A stretch of 64,000 nt of DNA from Iphione sp. A-MEVVRFRX5 (Eukaryota): NCBI GenBank assembly GCA_976226885.1, contig OZ320320.1:35836001-35900000 (forward strand), given 5' to 3'. Every line of letters starts with the position of its first letter. The first letter of the stretch is position 1. A program made the translations under genes and the position numbers. Below are positions 2,400 to 60,800 of the stretch, in pieces. Below the pieces are notes generated by a model. The model saw only the letters and a list, made by a program, of their open reading frames with translations. It was not told the origin of the DNA and did not search any database.

Positions 2400-3875
2400 A
2401 TCCACCCAAGTTTAGGCCTTTGGTTCCAAAGCTGAGTATCAGAAAAGTCTCAGGGATTGACGACATCCCAACCAGGGTTCTCAAACCACTGATCTTATTG
2501 AATCTGGATTTTCTATACTGGGTTTTCGGCAGACTCATCTCCATGGGTAAACTACCCAGCAGCGTAGAAAATAGCATGGGTCACACCACTGTACAAGTGT
2601 GGTGATCGTAACTCACTAGGCAACTATAGGCCTGTGTCTGTTCTTCCACTGCCTGCGAGAAACTCTTCGTCAAAGAAACCATGCACAACCTAGACAAAAG
2701 GAAATTCATCAGTGAGTAGCAGCATGGTTTCAGTCAAGGGCACAGTGCTGAAACCCCAATAGTATCACTAATAGGCAAAGCCAGTGAACTAATAAACACT
2801 GGGATGTACTGCTGCTTAGTTGCATTTGATATGAGGAAGGCATTTGACCTAGTGCCTTCCTCTGTGGTGTTGTGATGGCTCAAAGACTCAGGTGCAGGGT
2901 ACGGCATCTGCAAGCTTGTAGGCAGCTACTTTGACAAACAGTTTCAATTTGTGAGGTGCAAGGGGGTCAACATTGAAATGAGATGTATCAAAAACAGAGT
3001 ACCTCAAGGTTCCATTTTCAGGCCAAAAGCATTCGTAATTTTGATCGACAAACTCATTTGCTGTCTTCCAGAGTACTCGCACGTCATTTTGTATGTGGAA
3101 GATTTATCTATTATCATCAGTGCCAGGCATCTGCTTCACTTACGAGGCATGTGCCAACACACAGTTGACATGGTTGCAAAGTGGCGCAGAGGAGCAGGTT
3201 TAATCCTAAGTGAGGGTAAATGCTGTTACATGCCCCTCGACAAGGCAGCGGGCACTCCACTAGACATCAAAGTCAATGATACAGACCTGGACATGGTAAA
3301 TAGGGTACGCCTATTGGGGTACACCTTTGATGCTTGGTTGAGATTTAATGAGGCACTGAAGAAGGTAAAAAGCAAAATGTGGTCTGCGGCCTCAAAGATC
3401 TCCAGAACCAAGAGGACAAAGCTCTTTAAAGCACTAGTGATGCCTTGCGTACAGTATGGGGCAGTTTTATTCTTTGGGAGTTCCAATGCCATGATCTGCA
3501 ATCTGCAGATACACCTATGCAAGTGTGTAAGGATATGCTTGCAAAGCAATCCTCAGGTCTCCCATCATATGCATCAGTGGCTAGGCCAGGATTGCCAGGG
3601 TGGATGAGTTGATATCCTGCAAGGCATTAGCTGATACATACAGACTGGTGAAGCTGAGCCTTCTATCTACGGCAAATGTCACAAAAATGAGAGGAGGCCA
3701 CACCCTCCGAATAAAGGTCAACCATCCTAGGAGCAAGGTCTTTGCTCGTAGAATGAAGTATCAATTGGTGGTCATGTGGAATGACCTGCCAGACCATCTT
3801 AAGAGGATAGATAGAGTTAGTGTGAAGACATGGGTAGAGGTGCTTGGGTATGAGGGGAATGGCCTCAGATAACAT
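2400..3875 (+). mobile_element. Non-LTR retrotransposon (LINE, CR1/L2/Jockey-like) reverse transcriptase relic
   Basis: Motifs in RT order: KVSGIDDIP, QHGFSQGHS, VAFDMRKAFDLV, RVPQGSIF, LYVEDLSII (YADD equivalent), LLGYTFD. Several stops and frameshifts. Confidence 0.85.
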
Positions 3876-4321
3876 AGGGGACTACTAGTCGATTCCTATT
3901 CCAGTTGAGGATGTGAGGATCATTTACTGTTTAATTAAGTTCTCGCTTGATGATCAGTCTAGGGTGCCACTAAGTTCCTGGGAGAGTAGTCTCCTAAGGG
4001 GAGTGGTCATTTAGCAGCATGTACCGGGAGTGAAATGATGAGAGATCTACTTGCATAGTAGATCTGGCGTTCTGATTTGTGGCATGGCTAAAAGAAGTGA
4101 GAAGGAATTTGGCCCACATGACCGGAGATGACCACAATATGCTACCAGCAGTTGCACTTGCTAGTAAGTGAGACAGCAGAAAATACGTAGTATATTTGAT
4201 GGTTTTTCCCTTGACATGGGCCATATGGAGCTGGATTAAGGGAGAAAAGGTGGTTGTATGTGCCTGTGCATGATACAGAGGATAGATGAGAAACAGTAGT
4301 TGTAAAAGAGTATTGAATTAA

Positions 4322-7186
4322 CCCTACGGCACTGGCACCTAGCGAGGGAGTGGGACACTAAAGCCAGTATGCATCATGACGTTATGTAGCATTGGCGCCG
4401 GGCAGTCTGCGGCACAAGTAAAGGCAGAGCTGTACATTCCATCGATTACCACTGTTTTTGTATTGAAATTGATTAATAATAAGAATAAAAAGCATGGTTA
4501 TAATTAGAGAAGATATTTAGGTATTTTTAGCTGCTTTCTATTATGTTATATTTATTCATCTTTTATGTGAAAGATGATTTTTGGTTTCGGTGTATGTCAA
4601 TATGTCATGACGTTGTTGATTACGCTGAGTTGAAGAAGCTTGGATGCAGCTGTAAATACAGGGAACATTTATTTGAGTGGATAGATACAGAATATACAGA
4701 CACAGGGATGAAAGGTACATGTGAATTGATTTTATTTCAGTATTGCATGTAAATGTGATTTTCTTTTACAGGCTTATTCATACATCAGCAGTTGTTAGTC
4801 ACTGCTCCAATTCGAAACCTACTATGTCACGATGTGTATGATAAAACGTGAAACAAGTGGGGAGACACAGATTCACCCCACATTTTGGACATCCATATTT
4901 AGTCTGACCAATTTTATTACCAACACCTGCTACATTCCTCTTATAACATACCCTGCATCATGCTTTTCTTGTAAGAATTCCTGGCATGCATCTAGACTTC
5001 AATCTAGTAAGGTCTGACATTCTCGCCCTGTTTCTAGTATCGACAGTGGCAGTTAGCTGTTCCCCAATCAATTCTTCAATGAGCAATAGAGAAAAATCCA
5101 TGAAACCTTTTCTTGCATTGCCTGGGTGGAGGGATTTGTAGATTATGTAAGAGTTAACCTTCATCAACTCTATAATGAACCAAAAGATCTTCAGAGTCCA
5201 GCGGATCGTTTTTTTCTGATGTTGATAGTATTGTATGTACTGATCAAAGAGATCCACCCCACCCATGTATTTTGTGTACTGGACAATTGCAGATGGACAA
5301 TTAATTTTACTCTTTGAATATTACCCACTTTTTGGGTCTTTACCTCCACGTTGGATCTCTTCTGTCTGGGTACCATGACAAGATGTTAGTAAGTGGACAA
5401 CTCTGGTGTCCCTCCACACAATTAATTTTTGGCAATCCTTACTGAAAAATCTTACTGAGCCTCGTCATTTCTCAAGACATCCAGGTTTCCTGCACATGAC
5501 TTTTTTTGGCAAAAAAAATCGATTTTTCCTTACAGTACTACAACAATATATTCCTAAAGCATGCATTTTCTTGAATAAGGGTACAGTACAAAAAAAATTA
5601 TCCATAAATAACCTGATGCCTTTTCCAGTGATTTCTCCCATATGTACTAGCTTGTCAACAACATATTCTGCCAGGGGTCGGCTACATTGTCCCTCCTTCC
5701 CACAATAGGGTATAATCTGTGAAACGTAGCCTGGAAGTGGGAAAGAAACATAAATGACTATAATGTAAATTATTCACAGAGTTCATAAATTTATGTGACA
5801 ATTTCAATCATTTTTTTTTTTGGACTTTGTTTATTTTTTTCCAGATATTTACTGTCCCACATACCTGTCAGGGATTCAGCAAGCGTCCACATTTTTAAGC
5901 CCCATTTATGGGGCTTGTTAGGCATATACTGCCTACAATGAATTTTTCCTTTGAAAGGCACCAGTGACTCATCAATTGACATTTCACATCTTGGTTTATA
6001 AATTTTTTTGGCAACAGAATTGAACAGATCCAGCATATGAAGGATTTTCCAGAGGGGGTTGTACAGGGCACGTATACCATTGGCCGCTCCGACTTTTTCA
6101 TAGAATGCCAAATGTCTGGAATATGACAATGGATAATACAATGAAATCAATAAATAAATAGGAAAAATCAGAAAATTCACTATATATCATTTCTGACAAT
6201 TTCTTAGAGGAGGGAAGAGGTACTGTGTATGGAGAGACAGTCACCTGAGAATTGCGAAAAATCGGTACCTTGCCATTGTCATGTTGAAGATGGGAGTCAG
6301 CAGAAGTCGATGTTGTCTCCAATAATTTCTCAAGGAAGGCATCCTCACTATACCCATTAACATGCCAATGCCTAAAAATTGCTTGAGATCAGAAATCATG
6401 ATATCTGCCCATTTTTTCATGTGGCTCCTGGGTCCTGTAGTTCCATCAATGCCAGCCCTCTCATTTGTTCTCCTGGTTATCAACTTCAAGAGATTGAGTG
6501 ACATGAACACCGAAAAAATATCCATAGGTGTTGATGTCTCAGTAAGATCAGATTCTTTGGAAACACCACAGTCAGCCTCATTGAAGACAATTTCAGGGCT
6601 GGGATCTTCAATACCAGTCTCTAGGGTACACCAACCATCATATTCCTTACGTTCTTCACTTATTCTCAACAATTCCCCTAAAGGAACGTTGTCATCTTCG
6701 TACTCACATTCTGTCCCATTTGGTTCCTCTGATGGTTCATCTTCTGATGATTCTTCACTGATTTGCCCATCTATAAGTCTGTTGATTTCCTCTGGCAAAT
6801 CTTCTGGCCTGAAGCCATCATCTGAATCAAAATCTTCATCAATTTCCATGAGTTACGTCTTTGCTGTATGACACAATGTATGTCGGCTGCTTTCACAGTG
6901 ACAAATGCAAGTACGAAACAGATAATTGTAAATTTAACACATTTATGACATTTCCTGAGGATTAAATGTCAGAAAATACAACAGAATTCACTAAAATATT
7001 TTTTCCTCCAATAAGATCCCATAATTAACCCTTTGTCTCTATTTAAAATTAGTTTTAAATAGATTATACTAAACGAAGTATGTATGTATCCTCAGGGATA
7101 CAAGCCGGCACTGTACGGATGTATCCCTGAGGATATACACCGGCATATGAGGTGTATCCTCAGGGATACAAGCCGGCGCCATAGTG
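4322..7186 (-). mobile_element. Full-length piggyBac DNA transposon (2865 bp), inactivated
   Basis: TTAA at 4318-4321 and 7187-7190. Termini CCCTACGGCACTGGC and (reverse complement) CACTATGGCGCCGGC match at 11/15. An internal transposase gene is present. Confidence 0.93.
4799..6849 (-). pseudogene. piggyBac transposase, 3 exons (6849-6245, 6115-5865, 5730-4799), 595 codons, 3 in-frame stops
   Basis: GT-AG introns 6244-6116 (AG|GTGACT...TTCCAG|) and 5864-5731 (AG|GTATGT...TTCCAG|). Spliced length is 1788 nt = 596 codons with no frameshift. DDD motifs SIDESL, FMDNFF and MGGVDLFDQ, plus a C-terminal CRVC..CPKC..LC..CF..YH Cys-rich domain. Stops at 5465-5467, 5321-5323 and 4958-4960. Confidence 0.92.
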
Positions 7187-32810: not shown

Positions 32811-32856
32811 AATTACCCCTGAAGAAGAACCTTTTCTGTTCGAAACGTTGGGAATT
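32811..32856 (+). ncRNA. Minimal type I hammerhead ribozyme (Penelope-type, no loop III)
   Basis: AAUU(A)CCC-CUGAAGA-A-GAAC-cuuuucu-GUUC-GAAAC-GUU-GGGAAUU. Conserved core, 4-bp stem II, palindromic ACGU in place of stem III, and stem I CCC/GGG plus AAUU/AAUU. Confidence 0.8.
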
Positions 32857-56450: not shown

Positions 56451-57545
56451 GGTGGAAGAGCTTGGCGGCCGCCAGCACCTGCCAACCGACCGTACGACGA
56501 TATGTGGGGCGCGCGCACTACGGTGTAACGGGCCGCCCGCCGCCCGCCGCCCGCCACTATTTGTTGTGCCTGGGCCTGTCACCATGGTTGGGGGAGGAGG
56601 GGCATAGAAACTGAGACTGATATAAATCCAGAGTGCATAGCAAAAGAAACAGAAAAAGAAAGAGATGAACGCTTAATTTAAAAAAATCAGTGGAATGCAG
56701 TTGGGCACTTGCTACACACCTAAATAAGATCACTACATGTATATTGGGAGTGAAAAAGAGAGCGACAGAAGGGAAGAGAGAAAAGGAGAGAAAATAGAGA
56801 GAGGAAACATTACCAAGAAGTTGAGGAAACATTACCAAGAAGCTGAGGAAGAGACCAGGAGGGGAAGACCAGTTGTAATATAATCCATGCAAAAAAACTG
56901 TCGTGTTTTCGAAATGGGCTCGTGGACCGCGCTGATAGCGGACGAGGTTAAAAGGCACCTTCAGTTAGCATGGATAAAAACAGTAATGATCAAACTAACA
57001 AATGTTGGCTTTGGATGCAACAGGAAGCAATTTACGACAGCAAAGGTGAGAGAGGCACCCACAGAGTGAGGGGAGAAGTGAACAAATCAGGCAGTATTCT
57101 TGACACTTCAGCGTGGTTCCTGCCAGATCTAACAGCGATAGGTTTTTGCAGGCTCACGAGAGTGTGTACACATTTTACCATTCGACTGTTTGTCACATCC
57201 TGTCCCTCCGTTCTATCCCTGTAATCCGGTAAGTTCCCGTCACTGCACAGCCTGGACATCAATTTGTAGACTACCCAGTCTACCCAACCATGGCCTTGAG
57301 TATACCTGGCCCGAAATCTGGCTCAATGGAAAGAGTGGGAACAGTCAGGAGCACCTTCACAGACACCTCTGAAGGGAAACTGTGCTTCAGAAAGAAGGAA
57401 TCCGAGAGTTGGCTATCAGGGTACACTATATCCATGATAGAAGATAGTAGAGAATCTAAACAGAGACCCTGAGCAAGAACCAAAGCACAAAGCCAACAAA
57501 TCTAAAAAGAATATGCCATGAAAAAATATAGAGGTAATGAAGATT

Positions 57546-57872
57546 CATGATGTCACTAGTTTCCTCCTCAATAGGCTACCGAGTTTGGTGTCCCTTTGCC
57601 AGCACAGTACCCTCTGTTTGTGTGTTGCCTATGGCAACCAAGGGCCATAGGTCTCCCTATGACAGTTTCTCCCTTGAATGAATGGGGCGGGCAAATAAGT
57701 TGATCACGGGTTCACTCGGTTTCGACTTGGTAGTCTCTTCAGGCCTTTTGTTTTCTTTTAAACCGTTGATGTTTTTGGGTCGGTGAATTTGAAGGATCTT
57801 TTGTTTTAACATATCATGTAATTTAGTTTTAATCCAGTAGCCCCTGAATTTTGGGCATGTGGACTTTTGTAC
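57546..57872 (-). mobile_element. 327-nt retrozyme-like insertion with 18-bp TSD
   Basis: ATAGA(G/A)GTAATGAAGATT at 57528-57545 and 57873-57890. No ORF and no poly(A); contains a complete hammerhead. Confidence 0.85.
57570..57749 (-). ncRNA. Type I hammerhead ribozyme with 129-nt loop III; predicted cleavage after GUA (57577)
   Basis: AAAAGGC-CUGAAGA-GACU-acca-AGUC-GAAA-CCGAGU-[129 nt]-ACUCGG-UA-GCCUAUU. All core nucleotides are present; stem II 4 bp, stem III 7 bp, stem I 4 bp plus 2 after one mismatch. Confidence 0.88.
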
Positions 57873-60800
57873 ATAGAAGTAATGAAGATTGCAAGAAGGG
57901 ACAAGAACACCTTGGTGGATAAGCTTGCTAAAAAAAAAGCTGACAAAGCAGCAGACAAGAATGTGGACCCTCTACAATATCACCCAACAGCTGTCAGGAA
58001 GGAAGCCAACACAAACCAATAAGTATGGGTGAGCAAATGATACTCAATAAGCCAACAGACCAGTTAGACCAGTGGAAGGAGTTTTTAGCAGCCTTCTCAG
58101 TGGTGCATCAGTTGCAATTCCACTAGGCCTTGAAGAATGGGAAGATTTGACCATTAACCTGGACCCAATCAGCAAAGAAATAATAATAAAGGCCATCAAG
58201 AAGATGAACAGTGTGAAAACAACAGGACCAGACAACATTCACCCAGGAGTCTTGAAAGTAGACCCAAACACCAGGATGGCCTAGTCATCACACAGAGAAG
58301 AACTCTACAGGCTGAACGTAAGCTCATCAACATGACCTAGGGTGAAGCCAACAGAACAGCCTAGGACAGCGTGAGATGGAGATATGCAATGCAGCCCTTT
58401 GTTCCAATTAGAACAAAAAGGACTAAGTAAATCTGTTTGGTCCTATCCTCATCTCTGCTCAGTGTGCCTGTTCTCCAAATCTACTTTTTCTACAACCCAC
58501 TTGGTTCTTGGTCTCCTTGTGGTTTAGTCTATTTGCTGCTTATTAGAGCTGGTCCGAAGCCTACCTGATCCTCAGTGAACATATTTCGCAGCCAGTAGTC
58601 TTATCCTTTTGCCTGTCCCTGAGCATTCCACCTGTTCATCAATTCTCCCATTTGACAACCCCAGTGGTGGATTTCCAATCTTGTTTCTTCGCCTTCTTCG
58701 TTTTTGGTCTAGCTGGGCCTCAGCTTCCCTGGTCATCAGCCCACTTTTTTACCACCTGGTCAAGTAAGCTACTTGGACCTTAGCCTAACTCATAGATCAT
58801 CTGATCTCATCCTTGACCTGTTTGTAGTCCCTCAGCCAACCCAGCCTCTTAACTTTCTTTGATAATAATTTACCTGGACCTCAGCCTAGCCGGTCCTTCA
58901 AATGAACCAGTGCTAAACCTAACCTGAATATATCAGGACATAGGAATGTGCTGGTACCATTCATGTGTAAGACAAATGGTACACAGAAAAACGTCCATGA
59001 TGACAATCCACTGTTGATGGTTTTTCCTGGATAAGGATATATAAGTGAGATGCATAATAGGCTTATTTCAAATGCAAGCAGTCATCAAGCTGGCCCCAAG
59101 GGATCACTGTGTCTATCGTATTTAATACATGTACATGGAAAAGCATCATGCAGCTTGGTCCGAAAAATACATTGCTGCTACATATATGGCACTATGAATA
59201 TGTGCACATGGAAAGCCCGTCTTCAGTCTTCAGCCACTCATCTGTCCCTCGGTCTACCTTGGCCATCGACTCATATCATCCCTACCCTACCTACACGTCC
59301 ACCTAACTTGCCCTACAACCAATCTAATGGGCTTTCTTATAGCTAGAACTCGGTGTACCTAGTCCTTTCTTTTCTGGACCTAAACCTACAACTTTCTTTA
59401 ACTTAACTCATCTTCAGAATACCAGTTTCCTCTAATTCTAGGGTTTCTAGTCTACCAGCCCTGCACCTCTCTCGTCCTCTAGGTGTCCCTCAGCCCCCAA
59501 AGTCCTCAATCTCTCCTTACTATTGTCACAGCACGCGCCATGCCTATGCCTAGCCACGTATAAGCTTCTGTGGTCCTCATCCTCACTGCATGGGCCTCAA
59601 GCAGTCTCCCCGTTCCTTAAACTCCCTGGTCCTCAATCCCCCTCTTTCATTCGGTGTGCATGTATACCATGATACAGGTGTACATACAAATCACGAAACA
59701 TGCTACCTGCGGGGGTGGCTGTTATAAATCTCTTCTATCATTAGCCCATTATATTTGGCAGCAGTAAATCTATCAGCCTCATTTTTTACACCAAAGTGTC
59801 GCGGTGATTTATCCCATCGACGAGGTATAAAGGGTCTACAGCTTGGTGGCGGGTAGAAGCAGCCGGAAAATGCTCACGCCCTCCTCACTGCTAACACTCT
59901 TATCACAGGAATTTCAAATAACAGGACCAATGGCCTGTTTCGAAAGAAGGTACAGATGTTACAATGCTATCTCTGGTTATCTGCCAAATTCCAATGCAGT
60001 GTAGACAACACATATTTTCCCAGCCCTGACCTTAAGCCGAATAGCAGTATTACATACAAATTAACCGTCTCTACCACTCCCTGGCCTTCGGCCACCTGGT
60101 TACATTACTGATACATCTACATGTACATGCACTATGCTCACAAACTAAACCAGCAAGCAGTTCTGAGCTCTGGCAACCTATACGCACTAAATAAGCAAAA
60201 TAGCAAATCTACGTTTTACTACGTGTATATACATGTATATACTACTGAGCTCTCACGTACGGCCTAATGTTAAGACAGGTTCATGTAGTACATTTGCAAC
60301 ACGTAGTGTCTATTTCGACGGTAAGCTACCTAGCCCTAGGTTACAACGTCAGCTCTGACTTGAACAGGTCGTGCGCATTCCGTTCTCTATGTAGCCCCAG
60401 TCATGACAAGGGGGGCTATGTCCTATAACATCAAATGCACAAAAGATGTTAAGTATTCGCTACCAAAATTCACGAAGAAGAGATGCACCCCCCACCAAGT
60501 CCTTTTGATATTATCAGGGACCACCCCGGACACACGAGGGGGTGACTGCGTGCGCGAGCATACATCACAGTCCCCTTCTTTGAGAGGGGGGTGGGGTGAT
60601 AATTGGTGTCGTGGTAACAGGCCACGTGTTATAATGAGAGGGTGTCGGCCATTGCGAAGGTTGGGAAGGAGGAGGAGAAAGAGGGGTGATAAAGGGAATT
60701 CAGGCAGTTATCATACTTCACCTAACTTCACCTTAACATGATAACTGCACCATGTCGACGTCACGTGGACCAAGACACACTAATGTAACTCAGTCAAAAG

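What the first reader, a model, noticed from the sequence alone, without database searches (positions are those of the whole stretch)
57528..57890. 327-nt retrozyme/viroid-like RNA element with a complete hammerhead assembled across a 129-nt loop, inserted with an 18-bp TSD
Seen in sequence: an 18-bp direct repeat (1 mismatch) brackets 327 nt that interrupt an RTE LINE, and deleting them restores the frame IEVMKIARRDKNTLVDKLA. The minus strand holds every hammerhead core nucleotide (CUGAAGA, GACU/AGUC stem II, GAAA). Stem III is completed 129 nt away (CCGAGU/ACUCGG), followed by the GUA cleavage triplet and a GCCU that pairs with the AGGC preceding the core. Established knowledge: type I hammerheads mark non-autonomous metazoan retrozymes that form small circular RNAs, but the typical ones have a short or absent loop III. 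Inference: this unit has two large arms (129-nt loop III, and 154 nt closing stem I if the ends are joined), which is the architecture of a viroid/satellite-like circular RNA. The genomic copy looks like a circularly permuted monomer with no poly(A), retrotransposed by a LINE-type enzyme. It may be an undescribed retrozyme family.
Basis: partly seen in the sequence, partly recalled or inferred. Interest (0 to 1): 0.88.

Follow-up and report, generated by a model that had tools for sequence, protein, structure and literature searches.

The report
Truncated Penelope element with split hammerhead
The 327-base insert is the dead, front-truncated tail of a Penelope-type jumping gene, not a viroid-like RNA circle. 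Its self-cutting hammerhead motif is real and has an unusual stretched shape, shared by many related elements here and in other animals, that I did not find described in the papers I could read.

Summary
An 18-bp direct repeat (1 mismatch) brackets 327 nt. More than 30 paralogous copies of the host repeat are uninterrupted and carry the 18 bp once, so this is a true insertion with a target-site duplication. The minus strand carries a complete type I hammerhead whose stem III closes across 129 nt.

The interpretation mostly fails. The enzyme half recurs at least 181 times in this genome. Each copy I read through (41 of 45 distinct) has the matching substrate strand 125-161 nt downstream and a 31-39-nt tail that ends the element. 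Paired copies lie 4.8-5.1 kb apart and flank two ORFs. [quoted passage not shown] The insert is therefore a 5'-truncated PLE 3' end, about the size of a pseudo-LTR (pLTR). Its first 127 nt are unique in the genome, and no short tandem arrays were seen.

The interesting part is the ribozyme class. Seven PLE loci from other assemblies, including the nemertean Lineus longissimus, keep the same split layout with 156-282-nt inserts. All three helices differ in sequence, the core is invariant and H17 is never G. Published PLE hammerheads are minimal, with very short stem III. This scan had already noted the same split hammerhead elsewhere in this genome.

The parts
57528..57545 (.). Target-site duplication, left copy (18 bp; the boundary with the insert is ambiguous by about 2 nt)
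   Evidence: Paralogous empty sites carry this 18 bp once.
57873..57890 (.). Target-site duplication, right copy (1 mismatch to the left copy)
57546..57872 (-). The whole insert: a 5'-truncated 3' end of a Penelope-like element (about pLTR-sized)
   Evidence: it aligns from the hammerhead core to the 3' end with the 3' ends of the PLE family; the pLTRs of full elements are 284-306 nt.
57747..57872 (-). PLE 3'UTR, possibly with a decayed remnant of the last ~20 codons of ORF2. Unique in the genome.
   Evidence: no other copy; only a weak SPH..GL.LN..M resemblance to the ORF2 C-terminus, not significant.
57714..57746 (-). Hammerhead enzyme half: helix I 5' strand AGGC, core CUGAAGA, helix II GACU-ACCA-AGUC, GAA, and helix III 5' strand ACCGAGU
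57585..57713 (-). 129-nt structured domain closing helix III. Family-conserved blocks: GUGAUC, GAGACC, the hairpin GGUUGCC-AUA-GGCAAC, GCUGGC and GACAC.
   Evidence: conserved blocks in 33 copies; folds.
57573..57584 (-). Hammerhead substrate strand: helix III 3' strand ACUCGGU, H17 = A (57577), helix I 3' strand GCCU. Predicted cleavage between 57577 and 57576.
57546..57576 (-). PLE 'tail': 31-33 nt from the cleavage site to the 3' end of the insertion. It aligns with the family tail that ends in ..CACGUCUUGAA.
   Evidence: A 30-40-nt tail is a known PLE signature (PMC8557442, PMC11167929).
57319..58273 (+). Older interspersed repeat that was interrupted (the extent is what matched paralogues within the query). 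The RTE identity is unverified.
   Evidence: 253 candidate copies, about 76% identity; no RT or Pfam support.

Best explanation
The 327 nt are a dead, 5'-truncated copy (about the size of a pseudo-LTR) of a Neptune/Nematis-type Penelope-like retroelement (PLE). It inserted antisense into an older repeat, most likely by the PLE's own reverse transcriptase and GIY-YIG endonuclease, and left an 18-bp target-site duplication.

The hammerhead is the element's own ribozyme. It is a type I hammerhead with open helix I and a canonical 4-bp helix II. Its helix III is closed by a 125-160-nt structured domain rather than the tiny palindromic loop of published PLE hammerheads. The 31-39 nt between the cleavage site and the element's end are the PLE tail.

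Inferred mechanism for live family members:
1. In the pLTR-body-pLTR arrangement, transcription reads through the upstream pLTR.
2. The hammerhead cuts after GGU-H, so the RNA begins with the tail followed by the 5'UTR.
3. Reverse transcription starts internally at the end of the tail of the downstream repeat, as shown for the Poseidon element PAc.
4. The stable long helix III should let the ribozyme act as a monomer.
5. The inserted domain, which sits just upstream of the priming site, is a plausible docking site for the reverse transcriptase.

Steps 2-5 are inference. The window copy itself has no function that I can see.
For: Family membership and copy number:
- at least 40 scored matches to the enzyme half.
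- 181 core hits against 0 in the control. Mismatches cluster in loop 2, and paired copies lie 4.8-5.1 kb apart.
- 41 of 45 distinct copies have the substrate strand CUCGGU(A/C)GCC 125-161 nt downstream, followed by a tail ending in ..CACGUC.. where similarity stops.

The parent element is a PLE:
- between paired copies lie ORF1 (about 390 aa) and ORF2 (about 905 aa). ORF2 has a DKG motif, a polymerase-type D-D motif, a CX4CxxC linker and a Pfam GIY-YIG domain (27.8 and 29.2 bits against a cut-off of 22.6).
- homologues carry the RVT_1 and GIY-YIG Pfam families.
- 7308 candidate ORF2 matches in the genome.
- the upstream pLTRs are 284-306 nt and 98.7-100% identical to the 3' ends.

The hammerhead fold:
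- RNAalifold on 33 copies returns exactly the three hammerhead helices and nothing else.
- seven PLE loci from four other assemblies have the same split layout (loop III 156-282 nt). Each helix I position 1-4 has 3 base-pair types and helix II positions 2-3 have 4. The core, G10.1-C11.1 and A15.1-U16.1 are invariant. H17 is A, C or U. In shuffle controls, 0-27 of 2000 shuffles per foreign locus reach the observed pairing.
- full elements contain no other hammerhead.

The insertion itself:
- paralogous empty sites.
Against: - The window copy has no ORF, so its PLE origin rests on homology of 200 of its 327 nt. The first 127 nt match nothing, and the resemblance to an ORF2 C-terminus is not significant.
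- Within this genome's family the three helices are invariant, so they show no covariation. Those copies were also picked by the core pattern.
- In the other assemblies, helices I and III were found by searching for complementarity. Their support is therefore the shuffle controls, not the pairing itself. 4 of the 11 foreign loci gave no site; in one of them the contig ends too early.
- Helix I is only 3-4 bp in most copies, and the fourth pair is often A.A.
- About half of the copies in this genome do not show the junction in their minimum-free-energy fold.
- No cleavage, RNA-end or expression data exist here.
- For the Poseidon PLE, hammerhead mutants did not impair insertion in vitro (PMC11167929), so the role of the ribozyme in PLEs is unsettled.
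Confidence: 0.9

Rival explanations
1. One reading: a unit of an undescribed non-autonomous retrozyme or viroid-like family. It would be transcribed, self-cleaved, circularised into a ~327-nt RNA and retrotransposed as a circularly permuted monomer by a LINE enzyme.
For: - A type I hammerhead and a size within the 170-400-nt retrozyme range.
- A target-site duplication larger than 4 bp and no poly(A).
- A 2026 preprint argues that animal retrozymes derive from PLE pLTRs (10.64898/2026.07.22.740005), and this insert is about pLTR-sized.
Against: - The 5' 127 nt are unique in the genome.
- No copy shares its 5' boundary.
- No spacing shorter than 4.8 kb occurs among the 100 listed core copies.
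- The 3' end coincides with the PLE tail end.
- Full-length autonomous parents of the family exist.
- Loop III, not the helix I side, holds the conserved domain.
Confidence: 0.03
2. A short non-autonomous retroposon that consists only of a pLTR (3'UTR, hammerhead and tail), mobilised in trans by PLE enzymes, rather than an abortive copy of a full-length RNA.
For: - In three full elements the pLTR starts within 1-6 nt of the ORF2 stop, which suggests a defined ~300-nt module.
- Many solitary copies lack ORF2 upstream.
- The preprint 10.64898/2026.07.22.740005 links retrozymes to pLTRs.
Against: - The window copy starts about 26-46 nt further upstream of the core than the three pLTRs I measured.
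- It has no sibling copies.
- 5' truncation is the ordinary outcome of target-primed reverse transcription.
Confidence: 0.06
3. A chance hammerhead-like motif in unrelated sequence.
For: - The hammerhead core is short.
- Loose CUGANGA..GAAAC patterns occur by chance: 2 were found in the window against 0.8 expected.
Against: - 181 genome copies against 0 in the control.
- The substrate strand is invariant about 140 nt away, in an alignment with 63% mean column identity.
- All three helices differ between assemblies while still pairing.
Confidence: 0.01

Closest known systems
Minimal type I hammerheads in the pLTRs of metazoan Penelope-like elements (Cervera & de la Pena 2014, PMC4209133; review PMC6765202)
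   Same: - Same host element class (reverse transcriptase plus GIY-YIG PLE in partial tandems).
- Same place (the pLTR, just upstream of the tail).
- Same type I topology, a short helix I, and the same invariant core with G10.1-C11.1.
   Different: - Published metazoan PLE hammerheads have helix III of 0-2 bp with a tiny palindromic loop, a long helix II (6-8 bp) with a bulged base, and are thought to work as dimers.
- Here helix III is 5-8 bp and closes a 125-282-nt structured domain.
- Helix II is a canonical 3-4 bp without a bulge, and the fold is complete within one molecule.
Hammerheads of fungal and protist endonuclease-lacking PLEs (PMC4209133)
   Same: PLE-borne type I hammerheads with a 'large helix III' that are active as monomers.
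   Different: - The paper shows them as compact ribozymes, and it mentions no insert of a hundred or more nucleotides.
- Their hosts are telomere-associated PLEs that lack an endonuclease, not animal PLEs that have one.
Non-LTR retrozymes of animals (Cervera & de la Pena 2020, PMC7229834; preprint 10.64898/2026.07.22.740005)
   Same: A type I hammerhead, 170-400-nt units, target-site duplications larger than 4 bp, and a proposed descent from PLE pLTRs.
   Different: - Retrozymes are tandem, high-copy units with a short helix III. The long arm of their RNA closes helix I, and they are seen as circular RNAs.
- The window copy is single and non-tandem, and its long arm closes helix III.
Discontinuous hammerhead in mammalian Clec2 3'UTRs (Martick et al. 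2008). [quoted passage not shown]
   Same: The substrate and enzyme parts of one hammerhead are separated by a hundred or more nucleotides within one transcript.
   Different: It sits in a host mRNA rather than a transposon, has a different lineage and layout, and has no associated reverse transcriptase or tail.
Poseidon PLE of Anolis, PAc (PMC11167929)
   Same: - The order hammerhead cut site, then tail, then internal start of reverse transcription.
- The genomic tail signature.
- The ribozyme lies beside the RNA region that the protein needs.
   Different: - The PAc hammerhead is compact and overlaps the ORF start. It needs the protein in order to cleave.
- PAc has a single ORF, whereas the family here has two ORFs and a split hammerhead in the 3'UTR.

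Membership tests
Hammerhead ribozyme, type I | Conserved core C3-U4-G5-A6-N7-G8-A9 and G12-A13-A14 | tested here: met
   CUGAAGA and GAA at 57742-57736 and 57723-57721. The core is invariant in 33 copies from this genome and in 7 foreign loci.
Hammerhead ribozyme, type I | A15.1-U16.1 pair, G10.1-C11.1 pair, and a cleavage-site nucleotide H17 that is not G | tested here: met
   both pairs occur in all 8 lineages. H17 is A, C or U across lineages, and A or C in the copies from this genome.
Hammerhead ribozyme, type I | Three helices around the core with helix I open, supported by covariation | tested here: met
   the alifold consensus is the three helices; 3-4 pair types at most helix positions across lineages. 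Caveats: helices I and III of the foreign loci were found by complementarity, so they rest on the shuffle controls. There is no covariation within this genome's family.
Hammerhead ribozyme, type I | Match to the curated Rfam hammerhead models | tested here: not met
   no hammerhead hit at gathering score or at E <= 10. This is expected, because the models do not allow a 129-nt loop III, so it does not argue against the fold.
Hammerhead ribozyme, type I | Mg2+-dependent self-cleavage at H17 | not testable with these tools
   This needs in vitro transcription.
Penelope-like element (endonuclease-bearing, Neptune/Nematis type) | [quoted passage not shown] | tested here: met
   Met for full-length family members, not for the window copy itself. 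GIY-YIG at 27.8 and 29.2 bits. DKG, a polymerase-type D-D motif and CX4CxxC; homologues carry RVT_1 and GIY-YIG. I ran no phylogeny, so the clade is assigned from the linker motif alone.
Penelope-like element (endonuclease-bearing, Neptune/Nematis type) | Partial tandem arrangement that gives pseudo-LTRs carrying a hammerhead | tested here: met
   pairs lie 4.8-5.1 kb apart. The pLTRs are 284-306 nt, 98.7-100% identical, and each carries the hammerhead.
Penelope-like element (endonuclease-bearing, Neptune/Nematis type) | A 30-40-nt tail at the insertion end, no poly(A), and a target-site duplication of variable length | tested here: met
   a tail of 31-39 nt after the cut site; an 18-bp duplication and no poly(A).
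Non-LTR retrozyme | Head-to-tail tandem repeats of a 170-400-nt unit, in many copies | tested here: not met
   the 5' 127 nt are single-copy; no spacing under 4.8 kb among the 100 listed core copies.
Non-LTR retrozyme | Expression as small circular RNA | not testable with these tools
   No RNA data were available.
Viroid-like or satellite circular RNA | An RNA replicon without a DNA stage, with a rod-like or branched genome-wide fold | tested here: not met
   It is chromosomal DNA with a target-site duplication and empty paralogous sites, and it is homologous to a retrotransposon 3' end.

The most novel reading that the evidence does not exclude
A whole clade of animal Penelope-like elements, found in this genome, in the nemertean Lineus longissimus and in at least three other assemblies, uses a hammerhead class that I did not find described. 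It is a monomeric type I ribozyme whose stem III is closed by a conserved, 125-282-nt multi-hairpin domain. That domain may double as the platform on which the element's reverse transcriptase assembles next to its internal priming site, which would couple RNA processing to priming.
Probability: 0.45. Interest if true: 0.65.

Novelty: new variant of a known kind. Interest (0 to 1): 0.5.

Why it matters
The locus itself is a dead transposon fragment of no consequence.

The ribozyme class it carries matters more.
- PLE hammerheads are described in the literature as minimal motifs that cleave poorly and need dimerisation or protein help, and their role is unsettled.
- A PLE clade that keeps a self-contained hammerhead with a long, conserved insert in stem III gives a cleaner system to test two questions: whether PLE RNAs are really processed by their ribozymes, and whether the ribozyme region is also the reverse-transcriptase recognition site.
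- Descriptor-based and Rfam-based hammerhead searches miss this layout, so hammerhead counts in invertebrate genomes are underestimates.

Tried and rejected
- **Rfam** at gathering score and at E <= 10: no hammerhead hit.
- **Reading as a compact hammerhead** with the substrate strand near the core: the sequence upstream of the core is not conserved, and no substrate strand lies within 12 nt after GAAA.
- **Second, minimal hammerhead** in full elements: none found.
- **Other split hammerheads in the window:** none. The CUGAAGA..GAAAC string at 32819-32846 has A10.1-C11.1 in place of the G10.1-C11.1 pair, so I treat it as chance.
- **Covariation inside the 129-nt domain:** column-pair counts and RNAalifold on sub-blocks gave only noise and a possible GUGAUC/GACAC extension of helix III without covariation.
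- **Cross-family MAFFT alignment (A2):** it misaligned the 3' strands, so I did not use the count of structure pairs. I tabulated the pairs by script instead.
- **Loop 2 (ACCA) pairing with UGG in the tail or the inner hairpin:** seen only in one subfamily and not in the other assemblies, so I dropped it.
- **Tail GCCU competing for helix I:** no covariation, so I dropped it.
- **ORF2 remnant in the 5' 127 nt:** not significant.
- **RTE identity of the host repeat:** no Pfam hit and no reverse-transcriptase motif.
- **Literature not held:** Lunse et al. 2017 and the supplements of PMC4209133 and PMC8557442. 'Undescribed' therefore means not found in what I could read.
Full report
**The observation.** The 18-bp direct repeat lies at 57528-57545 and 57873-57890 with one mismatch, and it brackets 327 nt.
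- Helix I is AGGC/GCCU.
- The core is CUGAAGA.
- Helix II is GACU-ACCA-AGUC, followed by GAA.
- Helix III is ACCGAGU/ACUCGGU, closing across 129 nt.
- H17 is A at 57577.

The unconstrained fold of the 327 nt contains all three helices (z = -2.3). Rfam reports no hammerhead at any threshold. That is expected, because its models do not allow a 129-nt loop III.

**The insertion is real.** I searched the genome with the insert plus its flanks. More than 30 paralogous copies of the host repeat matched the left flank (query 220-444) and the right flank (query 772-1172) on target intervals that overlap by 18 bp. These are empty sites that carry the duplicated 18 bp once. The host repeat has at least 253 candidate copies at about 76% identity. 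I could not confirm that it is an RTE LINE, because there was no Pfam hit and no reverse-transcriptase motif in 55-61.5 kb.

**What the insert is.**
- The genome search returned the insert itself plus at least 40 partial matches, all centred on the hammerhead enzyme half.
- A 27-nt core pattern with at most one mismatch has 181 hits and none in the reversed control. The mismatches cluster in loop 2.
- I read the copies in the ribozyme sense. In 41 of 45 distinct copies the core is followed 125-161 nt later by the substrate strand CUCGGU(A/C)GCC. Then comes a 31-39-nt tail ending in ..CACGUC.., after which similarity stops. Sequence upstream of the core is not conserved.
- Copies come in same-strand pairs 4.8-5.1 kb apart. 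Between them lie ORF1 (about 390 aa, no Pfam hit) and ORF2 (about 905 aa).
[quoted passage not shown] This is the architecture of Neptune/Nematis-type Penelope-like elements (PMC8557442).
- ORF2 has 7308 candidate matches in the genome, many of them intact.
- In three full elements the upstream pseudo-LTR is 284-306 nt, 98.7-100% identical to the 3' end, and begins within 1-6 nt of the ORF2 stop.

The window insert aligns with this family from the core to its 3' end. Its nearest relative is about 70% identical over 188 aligned positions. Its last bases line up with the family tail. Its first 127 nt occur nowhere else in the genome. It is therefore a solitary, 5'-truncated PLE 3' end. It is also more diverged than most copies, differing at 7 of 82 family-conserved positions against a median of 2, with none of the differences in the core or helices.

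**Is the split hammerhead real?**
- RNAalifold on 33 copies (63% mean column identity) returns exactly the three hammerhead helices and nothing else. All of them are invariant, so there is no covariation within the family. Those copies were also chosen by the core pattern.
- The independent signals within this genome are the invariant substrate strand about 140 nt away, and a cleavage triplet that is only ever GUA or GUC.
- For a fairer test I took ORF2 homologues (44-46% identity) and fetched their DNA from other assemblies.
- Seven of eleven loci carry CUGAUGA (CUGACGA in Lineus), helix II and GAAA 280-560 nt after the ORF stop. The matching helix III and helix I strands lie 156-282 nt further on. 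These loci include Lineus longissimus and three unnamed assemblies or metagenomes.
- Across the eight lineages, each helix I position 1-4 shows 3 base-pair types and helix II positions 2-3 show 4. G10.1-C11.1, A15.1-U16.1 and the core never change. H17 is A, C or U.
- Because I found helices I and III by complementarity, their weight lies in the shuffle controls. At the foreign loci, 0-27 of 2000 shuffles per locus reach the observed pairing. Helix II was not selected in this way.
- Four of the seven foreign domains, and about half of the copies in this genome, show the whole junction in their unconstrained minimum-free-energy fold.
- Full elements contain no other hammerhead.

**Comparison with what is known.**
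- PLE hammerheads are well known (PMC4209133), as are the 30-40-nt PLE tail (PMC8557442) and internal initiation of reverse transcription downstream of the ribozyme (PMC11167929).
- The papers I could read describe metazoan PLE hammerheads as minimal type I motifs. They have an 'extremely short', palindromic stem III loop, a long bulged helix II, low activity and a need to dimerise (PMC4209133, PMC6765202, PMC7229834).
- The form here has a canonical helix II and a 5-8-bp helix III that closes a 125-282-nt domain. I found no description of that.
- Lunse et al. 2017 and the relevant supplements were not available to me.
This copy, however, fails the defining retrozyme features: it is single-copy and not tandem.

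**Mechanism.**
- Shown: the anatomy, the conservation and the insertion.
- Inferred from PLE biology: the upstream pLTR ribozyme trims read-through transcripts so that the RNA starts with the tail, and reverse transcription starts at the tail end of the downstream repeat.
- My own inference: the long helix III makes the ribozyme self-sufficient, and the inserted domain may be the reverse-transcriptase binding platform. The domain has conserved blocks GUGAUC, GAGACC, a GGUUGCC hairpin, GCUGGC and GACAC. A UAAGG..GCUGG-like motif lies about 30-35 nt before the cut site in 3 of the 7 foreign loci, and a similar AAGGGG..GCUGGCU block lies before the cut site in this genome's family.

**Earlier notes of this scan.** I consulted them after my own analysis. 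They already record the same split hammerhead in Penelope elements at several other places in this genome. They agree with this report, but they are not independent evidence.

Noticed in passing
L031:393-676 and 5208-5491; also L032 and L033: In three full PLEs the upstream pLTR starts within 1-6 nt of the ORF2 stop codon and is 98.7-100% identical to the 3' end. A fixed 5' boundary suggests a defined step, such as template jumping or more-than-unit copying, rather than random truncation. The elements look young.
   Followed up: partly
L031:1256-2431 (ORF1) and 2491-5202 (ORF2): This PLE family has two ORFs. ORF1 (about 390 aa) has no Pfam match. Canonical PLEs are described as having a single ORF.
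   Followed up: no
window 57640-57665 (minus strand); L032 cores at 495 and 5352: The 5' strand of the inner hairpin (YUGGUUGCC) mimics the substrate strand (CUCGGUAGCC). In some copies it offers a second possible cut site 79-83 nt after A15.1, with a 6-bp helix III and a 3-bp helix I.
   Followed up: partly
alignment A1, columns 134-150 (window about 57636-57652): The inner hairpin is nearly a perfect palindrome in several copies (for example GUUGUCAUGACAAC). It could therefore pair between two molecules, which recalls the palindromic loop 3 of known dimeric hammerheads.
   Followed up: no
whole genome (G000): There are 7308 candidate matches to the PLE ORF2. The top 50 are 53-84% identical and many have no stop codon, so this genome holds a large, diverse and partly intact PLE population.
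   Followed up: no
L069, L070 and L074, and the copies from this genome: about 30-35 nt before the cut site: A UAAGG..GCUGG / GGUUGG motif recurs before the substrate strand in 3 of the 7 foreign loci, and a similar AAGGGG..GCUGGCU block lies in the same place in this genome's family. It may be a conserved element of the inserted domain.
   Followed up: partly
window 32819-32846 (+): A CUGAAGA..GAAAC string with A10.1-C11.1 in place of the G10.1-C11.1 pair. It did not pass my scan for split hammerheads, so I treat it as a chance match.
   Followed up: yes
window 57319-58273: The interrupted host repeat has at least 253 candidate copies at about 76% identity and contains a QLDQWKEF-like peptide. 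I could not confirm that it is an RTE LINE.
   Followed up: partly
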